A stretch of 64,000 nucleotides of DNA from the sequence record MK250019.1; one strand, given 5' to 3'. How positions within the stretch are numbered: position 1 is the first letter of the stretch; each line of letters opens with the position of its first letter. Positions 1,434 through 63,925 of this stretch are shown here, in pieces. Under the pieces are notes generated by a model, which had not been told where the DNA came from, ran no database searches, and worked only from the letters and a program-made list of their open reading frames with translations. The position numbers and the translations under genes were made by a program.

Positions 1434-2883
1434 TTAGATTTTTGGTATATTAAAATTTGGGGTTGGTATATTAGGCGGCTGATAACTATTTGTTATACTT
1501 GATGGATTACTCATTTGATTTTTTAAATCATTCATGTTATAACGACTTTGCATATTATTCATTTGTTTTTCCATACGCTGATTTTCTTCTTTATTTTGTT
1601 TTTCTTGCTCTTCCATATTTTCTTTATAAACATCTAATATATCAAGAATTTCAAAAAAAGACATTTCTTTAATATCTTGAAAACTTAGNNNNNNNNNNNN
1701 NNNNNNNNNNNNNNNNNNNNNNNNNNNNNNNNNNNNNNNNNNNNNNNNNNNNNNNNNNNNNNNNNNNNNNNNNNNNNNNNNNNNNNNNNNNNNNNNNNNN
1801 NNNNNNNNNNNNNNNNNNNNNNNNNNNNNNNNNNNNNNNNNNNNNNNNNNNNNNNNNNNNNNNNNNNNNNNNNNNNNNNNNNNNNNNNNNNNNNNNNNNN
1901 NNNNNNNNNNNNNNNNNNNNNNNNNNNNNNNNNNNNNNNNNNNNNNNNNNNNNNNNNNNNNNNNNNNNNNNNNNNNNNNNNNNNNNNNNNNNNNNNNNNN
2001 NNNNNNNNNNNNNNNNNNNNNNNNNNNNNNNNNNNNNNNNNNNNNNNNNNNNNNNNNNNNNNNNNNNNNNNNNNNNNNNNNNNNNNNNNNNNNNNNNNNN
2101 NNNNNNNNNNNNNNNNNNNNNNNNNNNNNNNNNNNNNNNNNNNNNNNNNNNNNNNNNNNNNNNNNNNNNNNNNNNNNNNNNNNNNNNNNNNNNNNNNNNN
2201 NNNNNNNNNNNNNNNNNNNNNNNNNNNNNNNNNNNNNNNNNNNNNNNNNNNNNNNNNNNNNNNNNNNNNNNNNNNNNNNNNNNNNNNNNNNNNNNNNNNN
2301 NNNNNNNNNNNNNNNNNNNNNNNNNNNNNNNNNNNNNNNNNNNNNNNNNNNNNNNNNNNNNNNNNNNNNNNNNNNNNNNNNNNNNNNNNNNNNNNNNNNN
2401 NNNNNNNNNNNNNNNNNNNNNNNNNNNNNNNNNNNNNNNNNNNNNNNNNNNNNNNNNNNNNNNNNNNNNNNNNNNNNNNNNNNNNNNNNNNNNNNNNNNT
2501 GTTTCATCTGTCATAGACCAGTGTCTAATATCACCACCTGATGCTGCACGTACAAAAATTCGTGTTCCTTCTGGATAGAAAATACCACCCGTTGGAAGAG
2601 ACTCTAATGGTAATTCAAGAAATCCCATACCACTGTCATGAATTTCTTTCTTCAATTCATCCTGACGTATTGCATGTGCTTCTCTCATACTTGGTCGTGC
2701 TTTCGCATCTGCAACTTGCTCTGCAAAATGTTCCTGTGCTGTTTGTACATTTTCTACACTTGGTGCTTTCTTTGTGTTTGCTTTTGTCTTTCCTTGTTCA
2801 ATCTCTGCAAGATGTGCTGCACCTTCTGCTGTCTATGCATACTGTGCAAGAACATCTTCTACTGTATGTTTCTAATCTGACAT
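1434..2883 (-). CDS. putative baseplate hub / tail assembly protein(s), T4 gp26/gp51-like; middle lost in N gap, may be two genes
   Basis: With TAG=Q the 1669..2688 frame extends to ATG 2883. LESLPTGGIFYPEGTRIFVR resembles myophage gp26-like proteins. The end LSFQDIKEMSFFEILDILDVYKENMEEQ resembles gp51-like chaperone ends. Confidence 0.4.
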
Positions 2884-2954
2884 AATTTCGAAATTATTGT
2901 TTGTTTTATTTTATACTAAATTATTTAACTTTTGTTTACTTTATTTTATTAAGA

Positions 2955-5118
2955 CTAGTATTCCACTTTTCCTTCATATAGAGTTGATTGNNNNNNNNNN
3001 NNNNNNNNNNNNNNNNNNNNNNNNNNNNNNNNNNNNNNNNNNNNNNNNNNNNNNNNNNNNNNNNNNNNNNNNNNNNNNNNNNNNNNNNNNNNNNNNNNNN
3101 NNNNNNNNNNNNNNNNNNNNNNNNNNNNNNNNNNNNNNNNNNNNNNNNNNNNNNNNNNNNNNNNNNNNNNNNNNNNNNNNNNNNNNNNNNNNNNNNNNNN
3201 NNNNNNNNNNNNNNNNNNNNNNNNNNNNNNNNNNNNNNNNNNNNNNNNNNNNNNNNNNNNNNNNNNNNNNNNNNNNNNNNNNNNNNNNNNNNNNNNNNNN
3301 NNNNNNNNNNNNNNNNNNNNNNNNNNNNNNNNNNNNNNNNNNNNNNNNNNNNNNNNNNNNNNNNNNNNNNNNNNNNNNNNNNNNNNNNNNNNNNNNNNNN
3401 NNNNNNNNNNNNNNNNNNNNNNNNNNNNNNNNNNNNNNNNNNNNNNNNNNNNNNNNNNNNNNNNNNNNNNNNNNNNNNNNNNNNNNNNNNNNNNNNNNNN
3501 NNNNNNNNNNNNNNNNNNNNNNNNNNNNNNNNNNNNNNNNNNNNNNNNNNNNNNNNNNNNNNNNNNNNNNNNNCAAATAGATTTACAATACATATTATTT
3601 CTTATTTGTGGTTTAGGTGTATATTTACATTTCCAAAATGAACCTTCTATATCTTTATTATGTTTTGAATAATCGATTATATTAGTAAAACTTTCAATTG
3701 ACTCTATTGCATCAGTTTCACCATCACTTTCTAATAATCTTGTATTTGGAACATAATTATATGTAACTGCAACTTCATTATAAATAATCCATTTTGCTGC
3801 ATCATTNNNNNNNNNNNNNNNNNNNNNNNNNNNNNNNNTATTAGATAAATTATCATAAAACGCTTCAGAAACCAATGGAATCTCATTATTTTCTATTCTT
3901 CTCATAATGTCATCTGAAAGTTCAACTACATTATTTCCTTCACCATATACTGGATAATATACAATTTCTTTATTATCTGTATCTTCATATATTCTTACAT
4001 TGAAGTAATCAGAATTCGACTTATATTTTATAGCAATCTGATTTATTGGATCTTGATGGAATGTACTTGCATATATATTAGGATCTGTTGATGTAAGATT
4101 ATCTTCTGAAACTGTCGCAAAATTTACAATTAATGTTGGATCACTCAATATCTAATATTCTAATTTACGTTGTGTATTATCATTTGGTATTTTCCCATAA
4201 TATTGAATATTAGTTTTCTAAACATCATTTTTATCTGTAACAGTATTTTCTGTTCTGATTAATTCGCCATGTCCATATTTACTTTCTACTGATAAATTTA
4301 AATCACCATTTAATGACATATAATATGCAGATGGTACTAAAAATTCTATATATCTATCATAAAAACAACCATTCTGATATATTGGAGATTTATGCCATTT
4401 AACAACATTATGAAGAATCAAACATTCTTTAGGGNNNNNNNNNNNNNNNNNNNNNNNNNNNNNNNNNNNNAATGATAATTTTTCAACCTCAGTTTGTTTT
4501 GCATTGTTCTAATATGCAGACTATACTGCAGTTGGATTATCATTTGTAGTTGCAACATTATTATCATCTATCAATATATATTCTGTTTCGAATATAGGAT
4601 TATGATATTCATCATACATTTTATATGTATTACTATTAGGATACATTTTCTAAGAAGGTGTTAAATATCTTGCATTCGTTTTTACTTGTAATGTTATACC
4701 AGCTAATCTATCTAATGTAAAACCATATATAAAANNNNNNNNNNNNNNNNNNNNNNNNNNTTTACCACCTTTATGTTCTGTAAATGTATCAACATTATCT
4801 TTAATATTCAATAAAGATTCGTTACTATATACTTTACTACTATGTTTATCTATTACATGTTTATCTAATATTGAACTATCAACATTTAATGTATTTTGTT
4901 TTGTTAATCCAACAAATGTATATTCTGACATTGATTCATCTGGAAACTTAATAAAATACTAAGCATTAGAATATCTGTCATTATCTATATCCTATGGTTT
5001 TTCTGTATAATATACATTACCATCTTTACCTATATATACTGTATAATCTGTTGTTTTTTCATCAGGCGTATCATTTGCATCATACTAATTAGCTACATAT
5101 TCTAACATTATCTGATTA
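2955..5118 (-). CDS. large TAG-containing protein, probably structural; start lies in N gap
   Basis: Track ORFs 2955..4148, 4218..4421, 4650..4931 and the 3' part of 5085..5468 share one frame and are separated by TAG. Several N gaps interrupt it. Confidence 0.45.
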
Positions 5119-5290
5119 NNNNNNNNNNNNNNNNNNNNNNNNNNNNNNNNNNNNNNNNNNNNNNNNNNNNNNNNNNNNNNNNNNNNNNNNNNNNNNNNNN
5201 NNNNNNNNNNNNNNNNNNNNNNNNNNNNNNNNNNNNNNNNNNNNNNNNNNNNNNNNNNNNNNNNNNNNNNNNNNNNNNNNNNNNNNNNNN

Positions 5291-5972
5291 TTGTAGGACC
5301 TATAGACCATTTTTTCTGTTTATAATATTTCTTCAAATATTTAGATTTTGATGGGTCAAACATAACACCATCCATATTACTGATAGAAATATATGGATTA
5401 TCTGTTCTACCTATTAATCTAATTCCTGATTTATCTTCAATAATATCTAATGTTAAATTTGTATTCATAGTAAATTGATCTATATGTGCAGAGAATGATG
5501 AAAAGTCTTTTCTGACATCTGTTCCACCTGTAACTGCATAATATCCTTTTGGTTCATCAATATGCCATTTTAAATTATATATAGAATCACCATGTATAAT
5601 TGTATCAGACTATGCATATACAGTATCAATTTTTGTATGCATCTTTGTCTATGTAATTACCAAAGGATTATCTTTTAATGATTTTAATTCCTATGCTAAT
5701 TCACAATTCTGATTTTGTAAATCTTTTATATTCTGTACATAGATTTTTTTTGATACATATAAATTCTTTAATTTATTTTTGTAAATTTCCAATGAATCAT
5801 TATCATATATTACCAATGGTGGTTCAATTGATTTTGATTCATAATGTCTATACTTCATATAACATACACATGAAATCATTACAAATAAGATAATAACATA
5901 ATCTTTAAATGTTAATTTTCTATNNNNNNNNNNNNNNNNNNNNNNNNNGGTATCTAATATCTTGGTTATCAT
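5291..5972 (-). CDS. membrane-anchored coiled-coil protein (DUF6549-like / spanin-like), 3' end in N gap
   Basis: 5691..5972 reads through TAG in frame into 5085..5468. It has an N-terminal TM helix, a coiled coil and a KWSIGPT motif near the gap. Confidence 0.45.
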
Positions 5973-6255
5973 AATATTATAAATTATTTTTTAAATTCAT
6001 TAAAAATATTTCTCAAAAATGTAGACTTTTTCACAAAAGCCCAGTATAATAAATATCTTAGATGTTTAGGTTGAGATAGATATTATATATAATATGTAAA
6101 AAATTTAATTTTTAAGAAATAATTTTAAATATTTATTTTTGTTAAATATTATATATAATTTTTAATTAATATTCTTTTTAATTATTAATATTATTTAGAA
6201 TTTGTATAAATTAATATATAAATAATATTGATTATCAAATAGTTATAAATTATTT

Positions 6256-7800
6256 TTAGTGTCTATTAAAAATAATTTGTAAAAATGTAGACTTTTTTGA
6301 GAATANNNNNNNNNNNNNNNNNNNNNNNNNNNNNNNNNNNNNNNNNNNNNNNNNNNNNNNNNNNNNNNNNNNNNNNNNNNNNNNNNNNNNNNNNNNNNNN
6401 NNNNNNNNNNNNNNNNNNNNNNNNNNNNNNNNNNNNNNNNNNNNNNNNNNNNNNNNNNNNNNNNNNNNNNNNNNNNNNNNNNNNNNNNNNNNNNNNNNNN
6501 NNNNNNNNNNNNNNNNNNNNNNNNNNNNNNNNNNNNNNNNNNNNNNNNNNNNNNNNNNNNNNNNNNNNNNNNNNNNNNNNNNNNNNNNNNNNNNNNNNNN
6601 NNNNNNNNNNNNNNNNNNNNNNNNNNNNNNNNNNNNNNNNNNNNNNNNNNNNNNNNNNNNNNNNNNNNNNNNNNNNNNNNNNNNNNNNNNNNNNNNNNNN
6701 NNNNNNNNNNNNNNNNNNNNNNNNNNNNNNNNNNNNNNNNNNNNNNNNNNNNNNNNNNNNNNNNNNNNNNNNNNNNNNNNNNNNNNNNNNNNNNNNNNNN
6801 NNNNNNNNNNNNNNNNNNNNNNNNNNNNNNNNNNNNNNNNNNNNNNNNNNNNNNNNNNNNNNNNNNNNNNNNNNNNNNNNNNNNNNNNNNNNNNNNNNNN
6901 NNNNNNNNNNNNNNNNNNNNNNNNNNNNNNNNNNNNNNNNNNNNNNNNNNNNNNNNNNNNNNNNNNNNNNNNNNNNNNNNNNNNNNNNNNNNNNNNNNNN
7001 NNNNNNNNNNNNNNNNNNNNNNNNNNNNNNNNNNNNNNNNNNNNNNNNNNNNNNNNNNNNNNNNNNNNNNNNNNNNNNNNNNNNTTTGGAAATCTATAAA
7101 TTCTATCAGGATTGAGTTTCTTTCTTGTATTAATTAAAAGTTCTCGATCTTCTGGATGTTCATTTAAATGTCTTCCATAATCATAATAACAACCATAAAT
7201 ATATTGCATATGACCTATATTACATAAACCGCAATATTCTGTATGCAAACCATAATCATTTAGAAATGTTAAAATATTAATTGAACCCTGACGTCTAAAA
7301 GTATATGTAAAATCAAGCGGTGTTTTTCTTTCTTTAATAGGATTTACAATTTTCTTATTAAGACCGCGTGCTTTATAGATTTGANNNNNNNNNNNNNNNN
7401 NNNNNNNNNNNNNNNNNNNNNNNNNNNNNNNNNNNNNNNNNNNNNNNNNNNNNNNNNNNNNNNNNNNNNNNNCTTCACCTATAATAAAATTATCATCTAC
7501 AAATAAAGCTTCAAGAATATTAGGATTTGCCTTTACAAGTAATGATATAAATTTATTAAGTTCATACCATTTATTATCATTCTTTGAATCCGCGATTTCT
7601 TCTTTATATGTATTATAACCAAGAAGTTCTTTAATTGAGCAAATGTAAATTCCACCTGAATCTTTATCACTTTCTGGAGTATCTAGCCCATATGAAACCG
7701 AACCCCTGATATATTCAATAAGTAATCTTCCATCTTTTCTGATTTTATCAAATTCAGGAATTCCTACAGTCTCTGTTTTAAAATTCTTATATGATTTCAT
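6256..7800 (-). CDS. DNA polymerase beta-superfamily nucleotidyltransferase (PF10127/RlaP-like); C-terminus in N gap, true end uncertain
   Basis: YIRGSVSYGLDTPESDKDSGGIY is a GS..YG....SDxD motif; ANPNILEAL follows. Confidence 0.7.
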   Translation of the reverse strand: MKSYKNFKTETVGIPEFDKIRKDGRLLIEYIRGSVSYGLDTPESDKDSGGIYICSIKELLGYNTYKEEIADSKNDNKWYELNKFISLLVKANPNILEALFVDDNFIIGEXXXXXXXXXXXXXXXXXXXXXXXXXXXXXXQIYKARGLNKKIVNPIKERKTPLDFTYTFRRQGSINILTFLNDYGLHTEYCGLCNIGHMQYIYGCYYDYGRHLNEHPEDRELLINTRKKLNPDRIYRFPXXXXXXXXXXXXXXXXXXXXXXXXXXXXXXXXXXXXXXXXXXXXXXXXXXXXXXXXXXXXXXXXXXXXXXXXXXXXXXXXXXXXXXXXXXXXXXXXXXXXXXXXXXXXXXXXXXXXXXXXXXXXXXXXXXXXXXXXXXXXXXXXXXXXXXXXXXXXXXXXXXXXXXXXXXXXXXXXXXXXXXXXXXXXXXXXXXXXXXXXXXXXXXXXXXXXXXXXXXXXXXXXXXXXXXXXXXXXXXXXXXXXXXXXXXXXXXXXXXXXXFSKKSTFLQIIFNRH

Positions 7801-34980: not shown

Positions 34981-37050
34981 ATGAAGAATTTTATTTTGTG
35001 TTTGCTCATTTCATTTGTGAGCGTTTTTAATTCTTATGCAGACACTGTAACAGATACATTGACTGCATTGAAGTTGAAGGAAGTTACCGTAACTTCTTTG
35101 TATCGAAATAATGTACAGACTGGTAGTATGATTAATACATCTTCTATTAAGATGATGAATCATGGTCAGGGTACAGATTATGTACTTTCTACATTGCCTA
35201 ATATTTATGCATATAATGATAATGGTACGCAAATGGGTTATTGTTATTTCCGTATGCGTGGTATGGGTCAGGAACGTATGAATGTTACATTGGATGGAAT
35301 GCCTTGGAATGAAGCTGAAGATTTTGGTTGTTATTTCAGTAATTCTCCTGATCTTATGTCTAGTTTGCATTCTATTAAGGTAGAAAAAGGTGCATCAGTA
35401 ACTAATAACGGTACAGCTGCATATGCTGGTAATGTTTCTCTGGAATCAGTAGATTTGAGAAAAGATACAGATTCATGGTTTGATATTGGTTATGGTTCAT
35501 TTAATTCATCACGTGTAAGTGGCGTTTATAATATGGGATTGAAGAACCATTGGGGATTGCATGTTCGTGCAACATCACAGCAAACTGATGGCTATAAGGA
35601 AAATACATATAATAATTCAAAGTCAATTACACTTAAGACTGGTTATTTCTTTAATGATAAGCATTCGCTTGATTTCTTGACAATGACTGGTTATCATCGT
35701 AATGGTCAAGGTTTTATGGGTCTTACAGAAGATATGATTCCTAAGCATCCTACACCATTTAAGCAAATGAAGTCTGGTAATCGTCAGCAGGAAACAGATG
35801 ATTTCTTGACAACTTATAATAGATTTCAATACAAGGGAATTCTATCAGATAAGGTATTCTTGTCATCATCATTGTATTGGCAACATCAGACAGGTAATTA
35901 TCGTATTGGATGGGATGATCCTTCACGACCTACTGGAAGTGTATTGAATAATTATCATCTTAATTATAATCTTACAGGATTTAACACAGTAATTAAGTAT
36001 TATCCAGCTAATAATCTTTCACTTACAACTGGAGTAAATGCATATGTTTATCATAGACGTCATAAGGGATATGATATTGCAAACTCTGATAGTATTATTA
36101 CAGCATGGAAGAATCCAGGACTTACTCCTTATTATGATAATGCAGGAACAAAACCAGATGTAAATGTATTTGCAAATGTAAAGTATCAACCAATTAATAA
36201 GTTTACTATTGATGCTGCACTTCAATATCGTTATACATCACTTCATTATCGTGTAAATACACCAGCTATTGGTATTAATGGTGATTCTGATTTCAATCAT
36301 GACTGGAATTTTATGAATTACAGTTTTGGACTTACATATGATATTGATAAGTATTCAAAGGTATATGCACGTTATGCAGTCACAAACCGTGAGCCTTCCA
36401 GAACTGATATGTTCGGAGGTGAATATCGTACAGATGAATCTGAAATGAATACAAAGTCAGAGCGCGTACATGATGTTGAACTTGGTTATGAAATTCGTAA
36501 TAATAAGATTAATTTCAATATTAACGGTTTTTATATGAATTTTAGTAATGAACTTGTTGCAACAGGTGAACTTTCATCAATGAATGGTCTTCCTCTCCAT
36601 AAGCAGCATGATTCATATCGACTTGGTTTGGAACTTGCGATGGATTATAATCCTGTTAATACATTGCATCTTATTGCAAATGCTTCATGGTCAGAGAATA
36701 AGTTGAAGAACATTAATGGAAAGGAAATGAATCATACATTCTCACCATCATCTACATTGTTTGCTGAAGCAAATTATACAGTTAATAAGATTAAGTTCGG
36801 TGTAAATACAAATTTCCGTTCATCTATGTATATGGATATTTATAATAATCATCAGCTTAAGGAAAACCTTACACTTAATGCATATGTTAATGCACGAGTA
36901 TCAAAGATTGTAGAACTTAGTTTGAATCTTAATAATATTACGAATCGTTTGAATTTCTCTAACGGATCAGTTGATATTCCATCAGATACAGCATATTATT
37001 TGGTTGATTCACCATTTAATATGTTTGCGACAGCTAAGTTTCACTTTTAA
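34981..37050 (+). CDS. TonB-dependent outer membrane receptor, similar to Bacteroidota vitamin (thiamine-type) transporters
   Basis: Signal peptide, TonB-box-like LKEVTVT, plug GYCYFRMRG..RMNVTLDGMPWNEAED and SIKVEKG, barrel segments, and terminal Phe (ATAKFHF). Confidence 0.9.
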   Translation: MKNFILCLLISFVSVFNSYADTVTDTLTALKLKEVTVTSLYRNNVQTGSMINTSSIKMMNHGQGTDYVLSTLPNIYAYNDNGTQMGYCYFRMRGMGQERMNVTLDGMPWNEAEDFGCYFSNSPDLMSSLHSIKVEKGASVTNNGTAAYAGNVSLESVDLRKDTDSWFDIGYGSFNSSRVSGVYNMGLKNHWGLHVRATSQQTDGYKENTYNNSKSITLKTGYFFNDKHSLDFLTMTGYHRNGQGFMGLTEDMIPKHPTPFKQMKSGNRQQETDDFLTTYNRFQYKGILSDKVFLSSSLYWQHQTGNYRIGWDDPSRPTGSVLNNYHLNYNLTGFNTVIKYYPANNLSLTTGVNAYVYHRRHKGYDIANSDSIITAWKNPGLTPYYDNAGTKPDVNVFANVKYQPINKFTIDAALQYRYTSLHYRVNTPAIGINGDSDFNHDWNFMNYSFGLTYDIDKYSKVYARYAVTNREPSRTDMFGGEYRTDESEMNTKSERVHDVELGYEIRNNKINFNINGFYMNFSNELVATGELSSMNGLPLHKQHDSYRLGLELAMDYNPVNTLHLIANASWSENKLKNINGKEMNHTFSPSSTLFAEANYTVNKIKFGVNTNFRSSMYMDIYNNHQLKENLTLNAYVNARVSKIVELSLNLNNITNRLNFSNGSVDIPSDTAYYLVDSPFNMFATAKFHF

Positions 37051-38561: not shown

Positions 38562-39569
38562 ATGAGTGAATTAATGTTTAAGAGTAAGAATGTAACACCA
38601 CAGTTGAATACTTATGTTATTAAGGTAACAGGTAAGTATAATGATCATCTACCATGGGAAACAAATATTATTAATGTAGAGGCAGATCGCATGAATAATT
38701 TTGTGTTGTTATTTCTTGCATATGTTGGTAACAGAAATTGGCAGCATAAATGGAAGAATTCTACATTCGGCGAGAATTTTAAGAAGGGACCACTGCAGAC
38801 ATATCTAGGTGCTTTTACCGAAGATACACATTATCCATGTATGGACCTTATGTGGAATGATGTTGTTTCAGTCAACATTAATTATGTTAATAATAACGGT
38901 ACATACATTTTGTGTGAACTGCCTGATGTAGAAGAATTGTATGATACTGAGGAGGATTTCCTTAAGGAACTTAAGTCACAGTTTGATGAATTTAATAAGA
39001 ATGATCCTCGTGATGTTTATGAAGATGAAGGAATTGAGATTGTTGATTCATATGAGCTTGAGCTTGTAAGAAATGTTCTTCGTTCTACTGGTAAGTGGGA
39101 TAATGATGAAATTGATAATCTGTTTTGGGTTGATCGTGAGATTGGTTTTAGTTCATTGGTTGCACGTACTTCTACAGATGAAAATATTCTTAAAGTATGT
39201 AAGCAGGAACATGCTAAGAGTGCAACAGGTGTTGAGTATAATGGATTTAAACCAGAAACACTCGAAAAGATTAAGACCGCTATTAGTGGAACAAATCTTC
39301 CAGAGGAAACTAAGACATTTGTAATTGACATTTGTTCTAAGTATAATTCAAAGAATATGTTGAGTGAATCTGAGAAGGAAGATCTTAAGAATATCATGGA
39401 AACATATAATTTGGTAAATTATTCATATGGATGGATTGGCCCAGATGGTTGGAGTGGTATTTACCTTGAGCATGTGATAGATCCAGAGATGATTGATTTC
39501 GATGATTATTCAGAGAATTCAGTTATTAAGTATGAGGGTGAAACATATATTATTCATGAAGGAGATTAA
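38562..39569 (+). CDS. hypothetical acidic protein
   Basis: 335-aa ORF. Confidence 0.7.
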   Translation: MSELMFKSKNVTPQLNTYVIKVTGKYNDHLPWETNIINVEADRMNNFVLLFLAYVGNRNWQHKWKNSTFGENFKKGPLQTYLGAFTEDTHYPCMDLMWNDVVSVNINYVNNNGTYILCELPDVEELYDTEEDFLKELKSQFDEFNKNDPRDVYEDEGIEIVDSYELELVRNVLRSTGKWDNDEIDNLFWVDREIGFSSLVARTSTDENILKVCKQEHAKSATGVEYNGFKPETLEKIKTAISGTNLPEETKTFVIDICSKYNSKNMLSESEKEDLKNIMETYNLVNYSYGWIGPDGWSGIYLEHVIDPEMIDFDDYSENSVIKYEGETYIIHEGD

Positions 39570-39572
39570 TTT

Positions 39573-39995
39573 ATGTTAATTATTCTATCAATAGTATTAA
39601 TTATTGTAGGATTATTTCTTGGAATTTTAATAGGTACTTTAGGATCATTTGGTGATTCTGAAATACCTATTAAAGAAGATAAAATAATCAAGAGATGTTT
39701 GTTATTTAATATAGCATCTCGGTGTGATAAAATTATACTTGTATGTTGTACACCATTCGGATGGTTAGGAATTCTTTTATTATTTGTATGTTGTTTTGTA
39801 TTTCAACATATTATAGGAATTATGTTTATTAGTCCTTTACCTATGATGGAATTTCTTAATACATTTGAAGACAAAATATATAGTTTTGCACTACTATATT
39901 TAGTACCTATGTTTGGTGGTTATTTTATAGGTTATAATTATATGAATAATTTTATTAAACGAATAGAAAAAGAAGAACATGAAGAAAGGAACTAA
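39573..39995 (+). CDS. membrane protein
   Basis: Three hydrophobic segments. Confidence 0.6.
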   Translation: MLIILSIVLIIVGLFLGILIGTLGSFGDSEIPIKEDKIIKRCLLFNIASRCDKIILVCCTPFGWLGILLLFVCCFVFQHIIGIMFISPLPMMEFLNTFEDKIYSFALLYLVPMFGGYFIGYNYMNNFIKRIEKEEHEERN

Positions 39996-40473
39996 ATTTT
40001 ATGTTATATTAGGTTATAATACAGAAACAGAAGCCTGGTATGGATATGTAGAAAATTCTTTTTCTATGGGTGCAGATAAAAATAGAATTAGAACATTTTC
40101 TACATGTAGAGCAGATTATCCTTGGAAAGATAGATCATTTTCAGAGAGAAAACGAATAGCGAAAGCATATTTGAAGAAACATGGTTATAGATGTAATTAT
40201 GCTCGTGATTATATTATAGATGCAAAGATGAATCCTAATTCACCAAATCAATGGATTTATTTTTATTTGCGAGATATTGTAGACAATCTTAATAAAAAAC
40301 ATTATAATAATTGTTATTGGAAAGTATATAGAGTAAATTCTAAGTTTTGTCCTATTAATGTAAATATGAATGAATATTACAAAACATTAGTAAATAAGAA
40401 ATTTAGGAAGTCTCTTGACAAATTTCAATTAAGAAATCAAGAATTTTCTGTAAAGGAAGTTTCAAAAGATTAA
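39979..40473 (+). CDS. hypothetical basic protein
   Basis: 164-aa ORF. Confidence 0.6.
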   Translation: MKKGTKFYVILGYNTETEAWYGYVENSFSMGADKNRIRTFSTCRADYPWKDRSFSERKRIAKAYLKKHGYRCNYARDYIIDAKMNPNSPNQWIYFYLRDIVDNLNKKHYNNCYWKVYRVNSKFCPINVNMNEYYKTLVNKKFRKSLDKFQLRNQEFSVKEVSKD

Positions 40474-40481
40474 AAATATAT

Positions 40482-40734
40482 CGGTACGGCTCTAAAGGAG
40501 AGAGCATCATTTATGATTAATGATGACGAAGATTTGTTCGTAAGTTAATCTTTACTAAGAGAATATACAATATTTAGTTATATAGAAGTAATTTAATTGT
40601 TATAATGCGAATACAATTTTATATGAAACTATATATGTCATTTATGAGATTATAGTGAAGAATAGCATTTACAGTAACTATAATAAGATGATATAAACAA
40701 TATAACTTCTGTGGTTCGATTCCACACGTACTGA
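40482..40734 (+). ncRNA. tRNA-like RNA with a ~175-nt insertion in the anticodon arm
   Basis: Acceptor CGGTACG/CGTACTG, D stem GCTC/GAGC, stem ATCAT/ATGAT and T arm TGTGG-TTCGATT-CCACA. Confidence 0.6.
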
Positions 40735-40753
40735 CTAATAAACATATAACATT

Positions 40754-40972
40754 ATGAAAGAAGAAATTAAATTCTTAGGTAAAACACCAAGAGAAATTGC
40801 AGAACGTTACTTCAATAAATCATATGAAGGTAAAGAACGATATGATATTTTAGTTGAAGGCTTTATTGAGGGATTTAATTATCTATTTCCTCATTATGAT
40901 ATAGCTAATACTTTGGTTGAAACATTTGAACGAATTAAAGAATTAGAAAATAAAGATAAAAAAGATTCATAA
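40754..40972 (+). CDS. hypothetical protein
   Basis: 72-aa ORF between the RNA elements. Confidence 0.55.
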   Translation: MKEEIKFLGKTPREIAERYFNKSYEGKERYDILVEGFIEGFNYLFPHYDIANTLVETFERIKELENKDKKDS

Positions 40973-40997
40973 TTATTTTTTTATTTGAAATAAAATA

Positions 40998-41007
40998 TGT
41001 ATCTTTG
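40998..41007 (+). promoter_or_regulatory. Bacteroidota-type -7 promoter element heading an ORF-free RNA unit
   Basis: TGTATCTTTG with no credible ORF for the following 1.1 kb. Confidence 0.7.
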
Positions 41008-41223
41008 TATTGTAAATAATGAACACCTATAAGTGTTAAGTAACATAAGGATGGAAATCTTATGGTTCGTAAGTAGTAATATCGAATAGTCCGCATAATA
41101 GGAACATGTCATTATTTTAACATTTATATAAGAATATACTACATGTCTTATATGAGCGTCAGGAGTATTGTAACAGAGTCGACGTATTTACATTTTTAGA
41201 GGCGCAGTTTTTAAATCTGACTA

Positions 41224-41257
41224 TTCTACGTAAAGTAGTGTTCTATGTAAAGTAGTG
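41224..41257 (+). repeat. tandem 17-nt repeat TTCTA(C/T)GTAAAGTAGTG x2
   Basis: 41224-41240 and 41241-41257 differ at one base. Confidence 0.8.
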
Positions 41258-41339
41258 AAGTGCAAGATACGGCGTCAGTACAAGTCTATATAATAAGTTG
41301 CAAATAAAAATAGAAACTGTTAAAATTCGTATCTAATTT

Positions 41340-41511
41340 GTCTGTATTTCACAATGGTTAATGAGGTACATGAAAAGTGATTTGGAAGAATCATTATAAA
41401 CATATTATGATTAAGATAACGTTCAACTAAGCTATATAATAATAGTAAGTACAGCGCTGAAAATATATGTTTATATGTATTGCGGTTGTGGTTCGATTCC
41501 ACATACAGACA
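41340..41511 (+). ncRNA. tRNA-like RNA with a ~103-nt insertion in the anticodon loop
   Basis: Perfect 7-bp acceptor GTCTGTA/TACAGAC, D loop with TGG, stem GTACAT/ATGTAT and the same 17-nt T arm as 40710-40726. Confidence 0.7.
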
Positions 41512-41515
41512 CGAC

Positions 41516-42025
41516 TTATATTAATGATGAAAAGTCTGCAATTAACAAAATATAAAAACATCTTAATGTACTGTTGATTATATGTTTTAATTTTGTTAAC
41601 TAAGAGATTCTTGTAAATTATAAAAATTTACAAATCGAGGGGAACGCATAACGGCAATTATGTTAGTACTTGGCGTTTAATGAAATGAATATGTATATTT
41701 GCCGATGTGCATATGAGTGACATTAAATGATAAAATTATAATAGTGTAGCGGTTCGCACGCCCGTTGGTAAAACGGGAAGGGTTTATGTTTGAAAGCATA
41801 TTAGGGGTTCGACTCCCGCTTATAAACAATTAAATTACATAATGTTCTCACGAAGAGCGAGCATCGGAAGGTGAGCAATTTAGAAAGATGTTTAAGAGTG
41901 ATCATATTAAATTGATTTCTAACAGAAATACGGTGACGTAGGAGCTGAAAAAGAACAAACGTATGGTAATGTTAGCATTATGTATTTAAAAAATATTAGT
42001 CCTCACAGACTTTACATTTTTTATA
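41516..42025 (+). ncRNA. candidate ~500-nt structured RNA
   Basis: Closing helix AAAGTCTG (41531-38)/CAGACTTT (42006-13). Internal helices include TTAACAAAAT/ATTTTGTTAA and TACATAATG/CATTATGTA. No ORF. Confidence 0.5.
41735..41827 (+). tRNA. atypical tRNA-Tyr-like (GTA) domain with a long variable arm
   Basis: D arm GTGT-AGCGGTTC-GCAC, anticodon arm CCCGT-TGGTAAA-ACGGG and T loop TTCGACT. Deviations: G33, only 3 bp in the T stem and a mismatched 1-72 pair. Confidence 0.45.
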
Positions 42026-42050
42026 ACTTTAAAATTTTGAATTTAATATT

Positions 42051-42085
42051 AAATCCGATGCTTGTAATAAGTATCGGATTTTTTT
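42051..42085 (+). terminator. intrinsic terminator closing the RNA unit
   Basis: AAATCCGATGCTT-GTAAT-AAGTATCGGATTT followed by a T run. Confidence 0.8.
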
Positions 42086-42100
42086 AATTCATAAAAAATA

Positions 42101-42110
42101 TGTATCTTTG
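42101..42110 (+). promoter_or_regulatory. Bacteroidota-type -7 promoter element upstream of nadR-pnuC
   Basis: TGTATCTTTG, intergenic. Confidence 0.75.
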
Positions 42111-42140
42111 TAATATATTAAATAATAATTAAATAATTAA

Positions 42141-43301
42141 ATGATTAAGAATATAGGAATTTGTTTTGGCGGTTATTGTCCTATGCATCAGGGACATCTT
42201 GATCTTATAATGAAAGCAAAGAAAGAAAATGATATTTGTTATGTGGTTGTTTGTGGTTATACAGATGAACCACGAGGTAATGAATTAGGTCTTAATATTA
42301 ATAATAGAAAAAGACTTATTAAAGAGTTTTTTAAAAATGATGAACTTATTCGAGTTCTTACTGTAAATGATACAGAATTAGGTATTGATGAAAGTATGTC
42401 TGAACATAATTGGAAAGTATGGACAGATTATGTAAAATATCAAATTACAGATGATCTTTTGGGTGGAGGTCCGACATTTCCATTTAGTCCTGATGAAAGG
42501 ATTGAAGCGCATGAATTGAAACTTACATTCTATGTTGGTGAAAAGTTCTATGTTGAATCATTGAATAAATTAAATATTAATGCAGTGTTAGTTGGTTACG
42601 ATGAGAATTCTCCATCTAATAGAAGTAATGATATATCAGCAACATATATTAGACAAAATCCTCAATATTATTGGGATAAGATTGTATCAACATTTAAACC
42701 TGCATTAACAAAGAAAATTCTTGTATTAGGTACAGCATCAGAAGGGAAATCAACACTTGTTAAAGATATTGGTAATTATTTTAATATACCATATACAACA
42801 GAATTCGGTAGGGATTATATGGAGAAACATTGTATGTTAGATCCTGATATTACTGTAAATGATTTTGTTGAATTCCTTATTGGACAGAGACAATATTATT
42901 TTGATGCTTTGAATGATAAAGGAAATAAGGGCGTTATCATTTCAGATACTGATAATCTCGTTACACTTATGTATGCAAAAGCATATGTATCTGATAATAA
43001 TATGCAAATTACTGAAGATGAATATAACAATATATTGAAACCACTTGCAAAATCATTACAAACAGGTGTTTCATGGGATGTAATTTATCTTATCAAACCG
43101 CATAATAAATTTGTTGATGATGGAACACGTTACATGAATCAATCTTCAATAGATGAGAGAATGAAGAATTATAAAATTCTTTTATCATTACTTGAAGAGT
43201 TCGGTTTACTTGATAAAGTAATTGAATTGAATGGTTCTTATATGGATCATTTTAATTATGTTAAGGATTATATCACAAAATTATATGATAAAGAAAATTA
43301 A
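42141..43301 (+). CDS. nadR: NadR-type bifunctional NMN adenylyltransferase / ribosylnicotinamide kinase (no HTH)
   Basis: FGGYCPMHQGH (HxGH), ISATYIR, P-loop GTASEGKSTL, EFGRDY and SDTD. Confidence 0.9.
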   Translation: MIKNIGICFGGYCPMHQGHLDLIMKAKKENDICYVVVCGYTDEPRGNELGLNINNRKRLIKEFFKNDELIRVLTVNDTELGIDESMSEHNWKVWTDYVKYQITDDLLGGGPTFPFSPDERIEAHELKLTFYVGEKFYVESLNKLNINAVLVGYDENSPSNRSNDISATYIRQNPQYYWDKIVSTFKPALTKKILVLGTASEGKSTLVKDIGNYFNIPYTTEFGRDYMEKHCMLDPDITVNDFVEFLIGQRQYYFDALNDKGNKGVIISDTDNLVTLMYAKAYVSDNNMQITEDEYNNILKPLAKSLQTGVSWDVIYLIKPHNKFVDDGTRYMNQSSIDERMKNYKILLSLLEEFGLLDKVIELNGSYMDHFNYVKDYITKLYDKEN

Positions 43302-43950
43302 TAATATATTATATTCAGAGTTTATAGAAGGAAGAAATATTAATGAACATTTGTTTATGCTCATTGGTATTTTCCTTCAATTAATTGCATGGTATATAAC
43401 TAAAGATTCATTGATTTCTTTAATATCAGGTGTAACTGGTATTATATCTGTTATATTATGTTCACAAAGAAAGATTTCATTTTATTTCTTCGGCTTTATA
43501 CAATTAGGAACATATATGTATCTTGCATGGCAGCAAAGATTTTATGGTGAATTAATAGAGAATATATTTTACATTATTACTATGTTAATAGGTATTGTAG
43601 TATGGTTAAAAAATTATAATACTGAAGAACAAATAGTAGAATCTAAAAGACTTTCTGATAGGTTATTCTATATAATATGTAGTATAATGGTGTTTATCTG
43701 TGTATTATTTGGTTATTATATGAAATACTTTACAGATAATACACAACCATTTATGGATTCATTTTCAACAGTACCTGCATTTATAGCACAGACATTGTTA
43801 ATGTTACGATATAGAGAACAATGGATATTCTGGATTATAATTGATGTTGTTTCTATATTCATGTGGATGTTTGCTGATAATTGGATAATGGTTATTCAAT
43901 TTATATTTTGGACAATGAATTGCATATATGGTTATAGAAAATGGAAATAA
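43285..43950 (+). CDS. pnuC: PnuC-family nicotinamide riboside transporter
   Basis: Multi-TM protein with ATG 43285 overlapping the nadR end. Motifs PFMDSFST, AQTLLMLRYREQWIFWIIIDVVSI and YGYRKW. Confidence 0.9.
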   Translation: MIKKINNILYSEFIEGRNINEHLFMLIGIFLQLIAWYITKDSLISLISGVTGIISVILCSQRKISFYFFGFIQLGTYMYLAWQQRFYGELIENIFYIITMLIGIVVWLKNYNTEEQIVESKRLSDRLFYIICSIMVFICVLFGYYMKYFTDNTQPFMDSFSTVPAFIAQTLLMLRYREQWIFWIIIDVVSIFMWMFADNWIMVIQFIFWTMNCIYGYRKWK

Positions 43951-62308: not shown

Positions 62309-63925
62309 TTGGATATATTAAAGAAGAAAACTTCTTTTTTAGATGAACATAATCCTTCTAATTCGGAACGTGTATATTGCTGGTATAATAATATAACAGA
62401 AATTCAGAAATGCCCTCATTGCGGTAAATCCAGAAAATTTCATAAATTTACATATGGATATTTTCCTACATGTGGTTCAAAAGAATGTCGTGCAAAATCC
62501 GTTGTATATGGAAATAAGTTTAATCATAATTTTGTAGAAATACAAAAGAAAATGAGAGAAACATATGCAAAAAACCATAATGGTTATACGCATAATATGC
62601 AAGATCCAGAATTTAAAAAGAAGTTTTTTGATGAGTTTAAAAAGAAACATAATGGTATATCATGTGGTGCTCAGACAGAATTAGCAAAACAAAACAGAGA
62701 GAAAACAACATTAGAAAAATATGGTTGTAAATATGCTTTATCATCTAAAGATGTAAGAGATAAAATATATGAAAAATATGGTGATGATGCAAAAATTAAA
62801 TTTGCAAAAATCGCTACTGATACACGGAAAGAAAATACATTAAATAACATTATTAAAAAGATTGAAGAATTAAATTATACATATATTTCAAATAATAATA
62901 ATTTATTTAAAATTAAATGTAATAAATGTGGACATATAAATGAAATTACAAGACAAGCAATAAACTATTACTATAGGAATAGTAATCATATATATTGTAA
63001 TAAGTGTGAATATAAAGAATTAACATATAGGAGTAATTTTGAAAAAGATGTTGTTAAAGAAATAGGAAATATTATAAAAGAAACTAACTATTCTATTATA
63101 ACAAATAAACATATTTATAATGGTAAAGAACATTTTGAAGTTGATATATTGATTCCTGAATTAAATTTAGCAATAGACTGNNNNNNNNNNNNNNNNNNNN
63201 NNNNNNNNNNNNNNNNNNNNNNNNNNNNNNNNNNNNNNNNNNNNNNNNNNNNNNNNNNNNNNNNNNNNNNNNNNNNNNNNNNNNNNNNNNNNNNNNNNNA
63301 TGATATTTATAAGAAAGACATTATATTAAGTCGTTTATCTAGTAAATTAAAATTAAATAAACATATATATGCAAGAAAATGTTTAATTAAAGAATTGACT
63401 CCTAAATTATATAGAGATTTCTGTAATGAAAATCATTTACATGGATCTGTTAATGCTTCAATAAAAGTAGGATTATTTTTTAATGATGAGTTAGTTGAAG
63501 TCGTAGGTTTAGGGAAATCTCGTAAATTAATTGGTAATAATAAAGATGAAGTTTCATATGAATTATTACGTTTATGTACAAAGAAATATATTAACGTTAT
63601 AGGTGGGTTTTCTAAATTAATGAATTATGTTATTAATAAGTTTAATATAAATTCCATATATAGTTATGCAGATTTATCATGGATAGATTTAAAAGGAACA
63701 TCATACATTAATAGTGGATTTTATATAGATAAAGTTATTGATAATGAATATTGGTGGGTTGTAAACAATATAAGAGAGAATCGATTGAATTATACAAAGA
63801 GTAAATTGGTATCATTAGGGTATGATAAGCATTTAACAGAAATTGAAATAATGCATTCTTTAAAGTATTATAGAATATTTGGTCCTGGAAATTTAAAATT
63901 TATATATAAAAAGAAAAGTCTCTAA
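62309..63925 (+). CDS. homing-endonuclease-like protein (zinc ribbon, EKYG repeats, PD-(D/E)xK, hef-like C-terminal domain); short N gap
   Basis: CPHCGK, LEKYG, EVDILIPELNLAI; C-terminal YARKC..NENHLHG..ELLRLCT..GGFSKL..SYADL. Confidence 0.75.
   Translation: MDILKKKTSFLDEHNPSNSERVYCWYNNITEIQKCPHCGKSRKFHKFTYGYFPTCGSKECRAKSVVYGNKFNHNFVEIQKKMRETYAKNHNGYTHNMQDPEFKKKFFDEFKKKHNGISCGAQTELAKQNREKTTLEKYGCKYALSSKDVRDKIYEKYGDDAKIKFAKIATDTRKENTLNNIIKKIEELNYTYISNNNNLFKIKCNKCGHINEITRQAINYYYRNSNHIYCNKCEYKELTYRSNFEKDVVKEIGNIIKETNYSIITNKHIYNGKEHFEVDILIPELNLAIDXXXXXXXXXXXXXXXXXXXXXXXXXXXXXXXXXXXXXXXXXDIYKKDIILSRLSSKLKLNKHIYARKCLIKELTPKLYRDFCNENHLHGSVNASIKVGLFFNDELVEVVGLGKSRKLIGNNKDEVSYELLRLCTKKYINVIGGFSKLMNYVINKFNINSIYSYADLSWIDLKGTSYINSGFYIDKVIDNEYWWVVNNIRENRLNYTKSKLVSLGYDKHLTEIEIMHSLKYYRIFGPGNLKFIYKKKSL

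What the first reader, a model, noticed from the sequence alone, without database searches (positions are those of the whole stretch)
41340..41511. Second interrupted tRNA-like RNA sharing an identical T arm
Seen: a near-canonical cloverleaf with a perfect 7-bp acceptor. Its anticodon loop is replaced by 103 nt containing GTGATT/AATCAT and an 11-bp TATAAACATAT/ATATGTTTATA helix. The 17-nt T arm TGTGGTTCGATTCCACA is identical to that of 40482-40734, although the acceptor stems differ. Inference: the two belong to one RNA family with a conserved elbow and variable anticodon-domain cargo.
Basis: partly seen in the sequence, partly recalled or inferred. Interest (0 to 1): 0.7.

Follow-up and report, generated by a model that had tools for sequence, protein, structure and literature searches.

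The report
Non-decoding tRNA-like RNA in Lak megaphage
This is a real, evolutionarily conserved tRNA-shaped RNA gene of the gut megaphage Lak-A2 that has no usable anticodon loop and sits inside a 1-kb operon of structured non-coding RNAs, so it most likely serves as a tRNA-like processing or stability module rather than as a decoding tRNA with an intron.

Summary
The window is Prevotella phage Lak-A2 (100% to MK250019.1). The described anatomy is present at 41340-41511: a 7-bp acceptor stem, a D arm, a canonical T arm and a 7-bp anticodon-like stem, with 103 nt where the anticodon loop should be.

The Lak-B orthologue keeps this frame. Eight stem pairs changed on both sides and still pair, so the fold is under selection. 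Lak-B has only 28 nt in the loop and no shared anticodon. About 75 nt of the Lak-A insert, including the 11-bp helix, are therefore lineage-specific.

No known splicing route fits:
- Rfam reports no group I intron.
- The phage encodes neither EndA nor RtcB.
- RNA-library contigs carry the unspliced form.

The element lies in an all-non-coding unit: promoter at about 41000, an abundant structured RNA, this element, a spacer RNA, a tRNA-Tyr-like element, another structured RNA, then a terminator at 42051-42081. It shares the C74 3' signature found in 30 of 31 Lak tRNA genes.

My best reading is a non-decoding tRNA-like module matured by tRNA-processing enzymes. The "one family with 40482-40734" claim holds only loosely. 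Devoto et al. 2019 described related "enigmatic" tRNA introns in Lak phages, but not this locus.

The parts
41340..41346 (+). Acceptor stem, 5' strand (GTCTGTA)
   Evidence: Pairs perfectly with 41504-41510. In Lak-B, 4 of the 7 pairs changed on both sides and all still pair.
41349..41364 (+). D arm (TCAC / AATGGTTA / ATGA)
   Evidence: The D loop is identical in Lak-A2 and Lak-B. The stem keeps 3 of 4 pairs in each lineage. The Rfam tRNA model aligns it in Lak-B.
41365..41371 (+). Anticodon-like stem, 5' strand (GGTACAT)
   Evidence: Forms a 7-bp helix with 41475-41481. All cells pair in all 9 sequences, with one compensatory pair and one wobble change.
41372..41474 (+). 103-nt insert in place of an anticodon loop. 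It contains the hairpin GTGATT/AATCAT (41377-41394) and the 10-11-bp helix 41395-41405 with 41465-41475.
   Evidence: Sequence and minimum-free-energy fold. Lak-B has 28 nt here, with a different hairpin and a shared TGGAAGAA motif. The insert is single copy in the genome. A-type variants change the long helix only to G-U wobble pairs.
41475..41481 (+). Anticodon-like stem, 3' strand (ATGTATT)
41482..41486 (+). Variable loop (GCGGT)
   Evidence: TTGCGGT is identical in Lak-A and Lak-B.
41487..41503 (+). T arm (TGTGG TTCGATT CCACA)
   Evidence: Canonical T loop. In Lak-B it reads GA(C)GGG TTCGAGT CCCTC: three pairs changed on both sides, with one bulged C. It is identical to the T arm at 40710-40726.
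41504..41512 (+). Acceptor stem 3' strand (TACAGAC), discriminator A41511 and C41512 (position 74)
   Evidence: 30 of 31 Lak-A2 tRNA(-like) genes have C at position 74 and none encodes CCA. This element shares that signature.
40974..41016 (+). Promoter-like repeat; its core ATGTATCTTTGTA (40997-41009) contains TAnnTTTG
   Evidence: 7 copies in the window against 0.55 expected, and at least 42 copies in the Lak-A2 genome. RNA contigs branch at 40973-40977 and at 41015-41017.
41015..41336 (+). Upstream structured RNA ('U-RNA'); its last hairpin ends 3 nt before the element
   Evidence: 56 predicted pairs, 10 of them compensatory. Depth is 500-1100 in one metatranscriptome against 20-90 in the flanks, over 40963-41264.
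41735..41827 (+). Third tRNA-like element in the same unit: tRNA-Tyr-like, with a long variable arm and G at position 33
   Evidence: ARAGORN. Rfam scores 18.6-23.1 bits, below threshold. Stems are kept by compensatory change, and the anticodon is GTA in Lak-A against ATA in Lak-B.
42051..42088 (+). Intrinsic terminator that closes the non-coding unit
   Evidence: 14-bp stem followed by a T run.

Best explanation
The element is a tRNA-derived, tRNA-shaped RNA that no longer decodes.

It is transcribed as an internal part of a roughly 1.05-kb all-non-coding transcript. In order, the unit contains:
- a promoter element at about 41000;
- the abundant U-RNA;
- this element;
- a structured spacer RNA;
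- a tRNA-Tyr-like element;
- another structured RNA;
- a terminator at 42051-42081.

Its intact acceptor stem, elbow and 3' A73-C74 signature make it a substrate for the enzymes that mature real tRNAs. These are RNase P at 41339/41340, 3' trimming, and CCA addition by the phage or host enzyme.

Cutting it out would separate the flanking non-coding RNAs, as in 'tRNA punctuation'. It would also release a stable L-shaped RNA whose anticodon side carries a lineage-variable extension.

Shown here:
- the anatomy;
- conservation of the fold by compensatory change;
- absence of a conserved anticodon;
- the operon context;
- the shared 3' signature.

Inferred:
- transcription of this segment;
- the cleavages;
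- CCA addition;
- any role for the released RNA.
For: Fold under selection:
- Between Lak-A/C and Lak-B, which are about 75% identical in this region, 8 stem pairs changed on both sides and still pair. That is 4 of 7 acceptor pairs, 3 T-stem pairs and 1 anticodon-like-stem pair.
- 95% of stem cells pair, 0 of 500 shuffles reach this, and shifted partners give almost no pairing.
- The D loop, variable loop and T-loop core are nearly invariant.

tRNA-like but not a tRNA:
- The Rfam tRNA model aligns the Lak-B copy end to end at 22.5 bits, below the 29-bit threshold, with the anticodon arm replaced by a 32-nt insert.
- The A2 copy gets no tRNA match.

No decoding function is conserved:
- The loop is 103 nt in Lak-A against 28 nt in Lak-B.
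- No excision geometry yields the same anticodon in both lineages.

Context:
- A promoter repeat lies at 40997 and a terminator at 42051.
- All four intervening segments have covariation-supported structure.
- The structured neighbours end or begin within a few nucleotides of the tRNA-like elements.
- The unit is expressed: the upstream RNA is 10-30 times deeper than its flanks in one metatranscriptome.

Shared maturation signature:
- 30 of 31 Lak-A2 tRNA(-like) genes have C74, against roughly 13% C in the genome, and none encodes CCA.
- This element (ACGA), its Lak-B orthologue (ACTC) and 40482-40734 (ACTA) all share the C74 signature.
- The phage encodes a CCA-adding enzyme.
Against: - No read-level RNA data were available. 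Depth over the element itself is at background in the RNA libraries, which may contain DNA. Its transcription, ends and CCA tail are therefore not shown.
- The abundant upstream RNA appears to end near 41265-41280, not at 41339. The idea that the tRNA-like element defines that RNA's 3' end is therefore not supported by the contig depths.
- Only two lineages exist, so each compensatory pair is effectively a single event.
- The majority Lak-B variant has an A-C mismatch in the T stem.
- A processing-only role does not explain why a 7-bp anticodon-like stem and a TGGAAGAA motif are kept in both lineages.
Confidence: 0.5

Rival explanations
1. It is a true tRNA gene (Phe-GAA or Ile-UAU) interrupted by an intron of the undescribed kind reported for other Lak tRNAs. 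The insert is removed and the halves are ligated to give a decoding tRNA.
For: - Devoto et al. 2019 report four oversized Lak tRNAs with inserts at the anticodon loop, and intron-less alleles exist for some of them.
- The insert here begins with a hairpin of 6 bp and a 6-nt loop followed by a long closing helix, which loosely resembles those introns.
- Removing 100 nt can leave a canonical 7-nt loop: anticodon TAT, GAT or GAA in Lak-A2, and GAA, AAA or AAT in Lak-B.
- The phage has several Rnl2-type RNA ligase genes.
Against: - The shorter Lak-B allele is not a canonical tRNA. It still has 28 nt in the loop.
- No single splice geometry gives the same anticodon in both lineages. In AT-rich sequence, loops with U33 and a purine at 37 arise easily by chance.
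- Rfam finds no group I intron, and 103 nt or 28 nt is too short for one.
- The phage encodes no EndA and no RtcB.
- The insert has no nested T-arm minihelix and lacks the (T)ACA start and AAATTAAA linker of the published introns.
- RNA-library contigs from two runs span the element unspliced, and no joint removes the insert. Contigs can, however, miss rare forms.
Confidence: 0.12
2. It is a stand-alone effector RNA: a tRNA mimic whose anticodon-side extension binds a phage or host factor. Candidates are a tRNA-targeting defence nuclease, a modification enzyme, an aminoacyl-tRNA synthetase or the ribosome. The tRNA frame would serve as a stabilising scaffold for that extension.
For: - Selection keeps the 7-bp anticodon-like stem as well as the acceptor and T arms.
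- Both lineages keep a hairpin plus the motif TGGAAGAA in the loop.
- The Lak-A2 genome has further oversized tRNA-framed elements with large inserts, of 226 and 236 nt, in its main tRNA cluster.
- Within each lineage the T arms of elements 1 and 2 resemble each other more than they resemble their orthologues. That would fit a shared lineage-specific partner.
Against: - No partner has been identified. The neighbouring genes are NAD salvage (NadR-like, PnuC) and a TonB-dependent receptor, not RNA-related.
- The extension differs almost completely between lineages, and the A-lineage hairpin shows no true covariation.
- The insert matches no known RNA family.
Confidence: 0.25
3. It is a decaying tRNA pseudogene with no function, kept only by chance or by linkage.
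For: - It has no canonical anticodon loop.
- tRNA finders score it below threshold.
- Some Lak-B variants have a bulge and a mismatch in the T stem.
- The loop has undergone a large lineage-specific indel.
Against: - Eight double, pair-preserving substitutions occurred in the stems while the flanking sequence diverged by about 25%.
- No stem-breaking change is seen among seven distinct A-type variants.
- The element keeps the C74 signature.
- It lies inside a conserved, expressed non-coding operon.
Confidence: 0.06

Closest known systems
Lak megaphage tRNAs with 'enigmatic introns' (Devoto et al. 2019, PMC6784885, Table S6)
   Same: - Same phage clade.
- Oversized tRNA-framed genes with an insert at the anticodon loop.
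- The insert starts with a short hairpin followed by a long closing helix.
- The splicing mechanism is unknown.
   Different: - This locus is absent from the A1 and A2 rows of their tRNA table and is not among their introns.
- The published inserts carry a nested acceptor-plus-T-arm minihelix and sit after position 37 of a clearly assignable tRNA. Their intron-less alleles are canonical tRNAs.
- Here there is no nested T arm, no assignable anticodon, and the short allele in Lak-B is still non-canonical.
tRNA-like processing signals: mitochondrial tRNA punctuation, MALAT1 mascRNA, MHV68 vtRNA-miRNA units (from general knowledge)
   Same: A tRNA-shaped element with no decoding role lies inside a longer transcript, next to other functional RNAs, and could be cut out by RNase P and RNase Z.
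   Different: Those cases are eukaryotic or organellar. No cleavage has been shown here, and the element carries a large anticodon-side extension.
Phage T4 stable RNAs C and D (species 1 and 2) in the T4 tRNA cluster (recalled from memory, not checked here)
   Same: Phage-encoded stable RNAs of unknown function, co-transcribed with tRNAs and matured by tRNA-processing enzymes.
   Different: No sequence or structure comparison was made here. The T4 RNAs are not known to have a full D-arm and T-arm elbow with an inserted domain.
tmRNA tRNA-like domain
   Same: An acceptor stem plus a T arm closes a large inserted domain.
   Different: - tmRNA has no D stem and no anticodon-like stem.
- It has a G3-U70 pair and a tag reading frame. 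Neither is present here.
- ARAGORN and Rfam call a genuine tmRNA elsewhere in Lak-A2.
Bacterial Y RNAs (YrlA; Chen et al. 2014, PMC4201824)
   Same: Non-coding RNAs that mimic the tRNA elbow and acceptor and carry a second module in the anticodon direction.
   Different: - In YrlA the RNA ends lie on the Ro-binding stem and the acceptor is capped by a loop. Here the ends are at the acceptor.
- The phage has no Ro/TROVE gene.
- Rfam gives no match.
Engineered tRNA scaffolds for RNA expression (Ponchon and Dardel; recalled from memory)
   Same: An RNA inserted at the anticodon stem of a tRNA frame is processed and stabilised like a tRNA.
   Different: That system is man-made. Here the inserted part has no shown function.

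Membership tests
Canonical tRNA (Rfam RF00005) | 7-bp acceptor stem, D arm, and T arm with a TTCRA loop | tested here: met
   Sequence and covariation. The Rfam tRNA model aligns these arms in the Lak-B copy.
Canonical tRNA (Rfam RF00005) | 5-bp anticodon stem closing a 7-nt loop with U33 and a conserved anticodon | tested here: not met
   A 7-bp stem encloses 103 nt in Lak-A and 28 nt in Lak-B. No anticodon is shared under any single excision geometry.
Canonical tRNA (Rfam RF00005) | Score at or above the family's gathering threshold (29 bits) | tested here: not met
   The A2 copy gets no match even at E <= 10. The Lak-B copy scores 22.5 bits. ARAGORN calls the A2 copy only at -ps80.
Bacterial tRNA gene with a group I intron | Insert with the group I catalytic core (typically 200 nt or more), detectable with Rfam Intron_gpI | tested here: not met
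   The inserts are 103 nt and 28 nt. No Intron_gpI match in the window or in the Lak tRNA clusters.
Archaeal/eukaryal protein-spliced tRNA intron (bulge-helix-bulge) | Splicing endonuclease (EndA) and RtcB-type ligase available | tested here: not met
   PF01974 and PF01139 are absent from Lak-A2 and Lak-B2, while the control genomes gave matches. The host genome was not examined; B. thetaiotaomicron matched RtcB in the control set.
Archaeal/eukaryal protein-spliced tRNA intron (bulge-helix-bulge) | Bulge-helix-bulge motif at the exon-intron junctions | tested here: inconclusive
   Inspected by eye only. A 4-bp TGAA/TTTA helix can be drawn, but it competes with the 11-bp helix and has no counterpart in Lak-B.
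Lak 'enigmatic' tRNA introns (Devoto 2019) | Insert after position 37 consisting of a hairpin, an A-rich linker and a nested acceptor-plus-T-arm minihelix | tested here: not met
   A 5' hairpin is present (41377-41394). There is no linker, and no T arm next to the closing helix.
Lak 'enigmatic' tRNA introns (Devoto 2019) | The allele without the insert is a canonical tRNA | tested here: not met
   The Lak-B allele lacks about 75 nt of the insert but still has a 28-nt loop and scores below the tRNA threshold.
tmRNA | tRNA-like domain with G3-U70, a tag reading frame, and a match to tmRNA models | tested here: not met
   Pair 3:70 is C-G. ARAGORN in tmRNA mode and Rfam give no match for this element. 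A genuine tmRNA lies at about 142.6 kb in Lak-A2.
YrlA / bacterial Y RNA | Ro60 (TROVE) partner, with the RNA ends on the Ro-binding stem | tested here: not met
   The phage has no TROVE gene. The ends here are at the acceptor stem.
tRNA-like processing module (substrate of RNase P / RNase Z / CCA-adding enzyme) | Intact acceptor stem and T arm, and a 3' context like that of real tRNAs in the same genome | tested here: met
   Acceptor and T arm are conserved. The A73-C74 signature is shared with 30 of 31 Lak tRNA genes.
tRNA-like processing module (substrate of RNase P / RNase Z / CCA-adding enzyme) | Observed cleavage at the 5' and 3' ends and a non-templated CCA tail | not testable with these tools
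   Only assembled contigs of RNA runs were available. Contigs cannot show RNA ends.

The most novel reading that the evidence does not exclude
Lak megaphages run a 'tRNA-punctuated' operon made only of non-coding RNAs. In it, non-decoding tRNA-shaped elements serve two purposes: they act as cut sites that release several structured RNAs, one of them highly abundant, and they act as natural tRNA scaffolds carrying lineage-specific RNA extensions. That would be a natural bacterial-virus counterpart of mitochondrial punctuation and of engineered tRNA scaffolds, alongside further oversized tRNA-framed RNAs elsewhere in the genome.
Probability: 0.35. Interest if true: 0.72.

Novelty: new variant of a known kind. 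Interest (0 to 1): 0.55.

Why it matters
Lak phages are the largest phages of the human and animal gut. They recode TAG and carry about 35 tRNA genes, some with unexplained inserts.

This locus shows that part of that repertoire is not tRNA genes waiting to be spliced. It is selected, non-decoding tRNA-shaped RNA embedded among other structured RNAs.

If these elements are processing or scaffold modules, three things follow:
- They give a concrete, testable explanation for some of the 'enigmatic introns' and 'pseudo-tRNAs' of huge phages.
- They point to an abundant, uncharacterised phage RNA next door.
- They caution against counting such loci as decoding capacity in phage tRNA censuses.

Tried and rejected
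**tRNA and RNA-family finders**
- ARAGORN in default and intron mode makes no call for this element. It does so only at -ps80, with a 100-nt 'intron' at a non-canonical position 30/31.
- Rfam at the gathering threshold and at E <= 10 reports nothing for this element or for 40482-40734.
- No group I intron is reported in any Lak tRNA cluster.

**Search for a third lineage**
- More distant Lak-like phages, found through the NadR-like neighbour (42-50% identity), have no T-loop, no tRNA-like element and no homologous non-coding block upstream.
- Exact-pattern scans of IMG/VR and JGI metagenomes with three conserved motifs returned only A-type and B-type copies plus chance hits.

**Tests of specific readings**
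- Insert as a repeated or mobile element: rejected, because it is single copy.
- Coding reading: the minus-strand ORF 41320-41502 (60 aa) is rejected, because C1-type variants carry a 1-nt deletion inside it.
- tmRNA or Y-RNA reading: rejected.

**Splicing evidence**
- Contigs from four RNA libraries show no joint that removes the insert, but they cannot exclude a rare spliced form.

**Technical limits**
- The MAFFT alignment of A-type and B-type copies misaligned the 3' half. It was replaced by a model-guided alignment.
Regions were fetched by handle instead.

Full report
**Source and prior knowledge**

The window is 100% identical to Prevotella phage Lak-A2 (MK250019.1; window position = genome position minus 447865). 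It is 97-98% identical to Lak-A1 and Lak-C1. Lak-B genomes match this region at about 75%.

Devoto et al. [quoted passage not shown] For Lak-A2 they list four: Tyr-GTA, Gly-TCC, Thr-TGT and Phe-GAA. None of these lies in the window. Their position-sorted tRNA table has no Lak-A1 or Lak-A2 entry at this locus. The general phenomenon is therefore published, but this element is not.

**The observation**

- The acceptor stem is GTCTGTA/TACAGAC.
- The D arm has the loop AATGGTTA.
- The T arm is TGTGG-TTCGATT-CCACA.
- A 7-bp anticodon-like helix, GGTACAT/ATGTATT, encloses exactly 103 nt.
- The insert contains the GTGATT/AATCAT hairpin and the TATAAACATAT/ATATGTTTATA helix.

Both helices appear in the minimum-free-energy fold (z = -2.0).

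The 17-nt T arm is identical to that of 40482-40734 in A2 and C1. It differs by one T-loop base in A1 and in most other A-type variants.

Standard finders do not call the element. ARAGORN finds only the tRNA-Tyr-like gene at 41735-41827, even in intron mode. Rfam gives nothing at the gathering threshold or at E <= 10.

**Comparative evidence**

Lak-B has an orthologue of 98 nt (L003 1722-1819). Against A2:
- Four of the seven acceptor pairs changed on both sides and all still pair.
- One anticodon-like-stem pair changed on both sides and another changed to a wobble pair.
- Three T-stem pairs changed on both sides if one C is bulged. That is also how the Rfam tRNA model aligns the T stem.

A covariance model built from the Lak-B copy finds every A-type copy end to end at about 40 bits (E about 2e-5), above any ordinary Lak tRNA. 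On the resulting alignment of nine distinct sequences:
- 95.2% of stem cells pair.
- Eight pairs carry double changes.
- No shuffle out of 500 reaches this.
- Shifting the partners by 1-3 columns removes most of the pairing (21-61% of cells against 95%) and nearly all the double changes.

Two caveats apply. There are only two lineages, and the alignment was fitted to the model. Even so, the RNA fold is clearly under selection, which argues against a dead pseudogene.

**The loop**

Lak-B has 28 nt where Lak-A has 103 nt. The Lak-B loop is a different hairpin (TTGATAT/ATATCAA) followed by TGGAAGAA. That 8-mer also occurs in the Lak-A insert.

The 11-bp helix and its 57-nt interior are absent from Lak-B. 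They are single copy in the genome. Among A-type variants they change only to G-U wobble pairs.

I enumerated every way of removing one block so as to leave a 7-nt loop. Many give a loop with U33 and a purine at position 37, which is expected in AT-rich sequence. No single geometry gives the same anticodon in both lineages.

The Rfam tRNA model aligns the Lak-B copy over all 71 positions at 22.5 bits, with the anticodon arm replaced by an insert. The element was therefore already non-canonical before the A and B lineages split, and the extra hairpin in Lak-A is a later addition.

**Splicing**

No known mechanism fits.
- Rfam finds no group I intron here or in the Lak tRNA clusters.
- The inserts are too short for a group I intron.
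- Lak-A2 and Lak-B2 have no splicing endonuclease and no RtcB.
- They do have a CCA-adding enzyme and several Rnl2-type RNA ligases.

I laid the contigs of four RNA libraries on 39000-43500. Contigs from two runs span the whole element without a gap, and no joint removes the insert. This does not exclude a rare spliced form. Depth over the element is at background, so its own expression is not demonstrated.

**Context**

The motif ATGTATCTTTGTA contains the Bacteroidetes-type TAnnTTTG box (the consensus is from general knowledge). It occurs 7 times in the window against 0.55 expected. As part of a roughly 50-nt repeat it occurs at least 42 times in the Lak-A2 genome, including beside tRNA clusters. 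Copies lie at 40997 and at 42100.

A strong terminator lies at 42051-42081.

No ORF of 60 aa or more on the + strand lies between 40997 and 42051. Nearly the whole stretch is conserved between Lak-A and Lak-B. It contains, in order:
- a structured RNA with 10 compensatory pairs, which is 10-30 times deeper than its flanks in one metatranscriptome;
- the element under study;
- a spacer RNA with 8 compensatory pairs;
- the tRNA-Tyr-like element, whose stems also covary and whose 'anticodon' differs between lineages;
- another structured RNA with 7 compensatory pairs.

The structured neighbours end or begin within a few nucleotides of the tRNA-like elements.

Flanking genes are a NadR-like enzyme and PnuC downstream. 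Upstream lie hypothetical proteins, a DUF4407 protein and a TonB-dependent receptor.

**A shared 3' signature**

I examined the 31 Lak-A2 tRNA(-like) genes that have an intact T arm and a 7-bp acceptor stem. Thirty have C at position 74 and none has CCA, in a genome with about 13% C. This element, its Lak-B orthologue and 40482-40734 all share the C74 signature.

This feature is not needed for folding. It therefore suggests that these elements enter the same 3'-end maturation route as real Lak tRNAs.

**Interpretation**

The best-supported reading is a tRNA-derived, non-decoding, tRNA-shaped RNA inside a non-coding operon. It would be recognised by RNase P, 3'-processing enzymes and the CCA-adding enzyme. 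It would then act as a punctuation and stability module, possibly carrying an effector extension (confidence about 0.5).

The contig depths do not support the specific idea that it defines the 3' end of the abundant upstream RNA, because depth falls near 41265-41280. The rivals are:
- a stand-alone tRNA mimic or decoy (0.25, and not exclusive of the main reading);
- a tRNA with an intron of a new kind (0.12);
- a pseudogene (0.06).

**The 'family' claim**

Element 40482-40734 also has a covarying 7-bp acceptor stem (two double changes) and a T arm. However:
- The element-2 model does not find it.
- In Lak-A it folds with a D arm, a complete hairpin with the 7-nt loop UAUGAUU, and a domain of about 170 nt in the variable-region position.
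- Its 5' third is unrelated in Lak-B, while its 3' two-thirds is a conserved structured domain.

In Lak-A both T stems are TGTGG/CCACA. In Lak-B both have a GGG/CCC core with two weak outer positions. This points to concerted evolution or a shared lineage-specific constraint.

Lak-A2 also has further oversized tRNA-framed elements in its main tRNA cluster, of 236 nt at 414503-414740 and 226 nt at 415864-416092. The shared feature is thus an architecture, not a demonstrable homologous family.

**Novelty**

This is a new variant of a known kind. tRNA-like RNAs, and Lak's oversized tRNAs, are already known. A conserved anticodon-less tRNA-like module embedded in an all-non-coding operon of a megaphage does not appear in the papers searched.

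Noticed in passing
window 41015-41336: A structured non-coding RNA lies directly upstream of the element. It has 56 predicted pairs, 10 of them compensatory between Lak-A and Lak-B. In one metatranscriptome its depth is 500-1100 over 40963-41264, against 20-90 in the flanks. It matches no Rfam family. One RNA-run contig replaces 41016-41311 with 23 other letters, which suggests a variant that lacks most of this RNA.
   Followed up: partly
window 40482-40734: The first 'interrupted tRNA-like' element is 253 nt. It has a covarying acceptor stem and a T arm. In Lak-A it also has a D arm, a hairpin with a 7-nt loop, and a domain of about 170 nt in the variable-region position. It starts 9 nt after the stop codon of the 164-aa ORF. 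Its Lak-B orthologue is 278 nt, has an unrelated 5' third and a weak T stem.
   Followed up: partly
window 41735-41827: A tRNA-Tyr-like element with a long variable arm, G instead of U at position 33, and a mismatched first acceptor pair. Its anticodon is GTA in Lak-A but ATA in Lak-B, while the anticodon and variable stems covary. It scores below the Rfam tRNA threshold (18.6-23.1 bits).
   Followed up: partly
window 41512-41734 and 41837-41990: Two more conserved structured RNA segments lie in the same transcription unit, with 8 and 7 compensatory pairs. The second is closed by a 9-bp helix, TACATAATG/CATTATGTA, that starts 10 nt after the tRNA-Tyr-like element.
   Followed up: partly
window 8420, 9594, 12241, 17974, 38515, 40997, 42100: A promoter-like repeat of about 50 nt with the core ATGTATCTTTGTA (contains TAnnTTTG). 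It has 7 copies in the window against 0.55 expected and at least 42 in the Lak-A2 genome, several of them beside tRNA clusters.
   Followed up: partly
Lak-A2 genome (loci L006-L011): 30 of 31 tRNA(-like) genes have C at position 74, and none encodes CCA: position 75 is A, T or G. This looks like a genome-wide 3'-end rule. The phage encodes its own CCA-adding enzyme at about 316.3 kb.
   Followed up: partly
L010 (Lak-A2 414503-414740 and 415864-416092, minus strand): Two further oversized tRNA-framed elements, of 236 and 226 nt, each with a 7-bp acceptor stem, a D arm and a T arm. ARAGORN and Rfam do not call them, and they are not in the published tRNA tables as far as those could be read.
   Followed up: no
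window 34981-37050 and 42141-43950: The phage carries a TonB-dependent receptor gene (Plug plus beta-barrel domains) and an NAD-salvage pair: a NadR-like NMN adenylyltransferase/kinase and a PnuC transporter.
   Followed up: no
window 40742-40946: The 72-aa ORF at 40754-40972 lies in a block of about 205 nt that is absent from all Lak-B genomes. It has no family match.
   Followed up: no
L008 8604-8998 (Lak-A2 about 142.6 kb): A genuine tmRNA gene (Rfam 58.2 bits; ARAGORN tag DDEIDFRMAA*), with two CTA suppressor tRNAs nearby.
   Followed up: no
window 1689-7472 and 63181-63299: Ten runs of N, 2671 bases in all.
   Followed up: no
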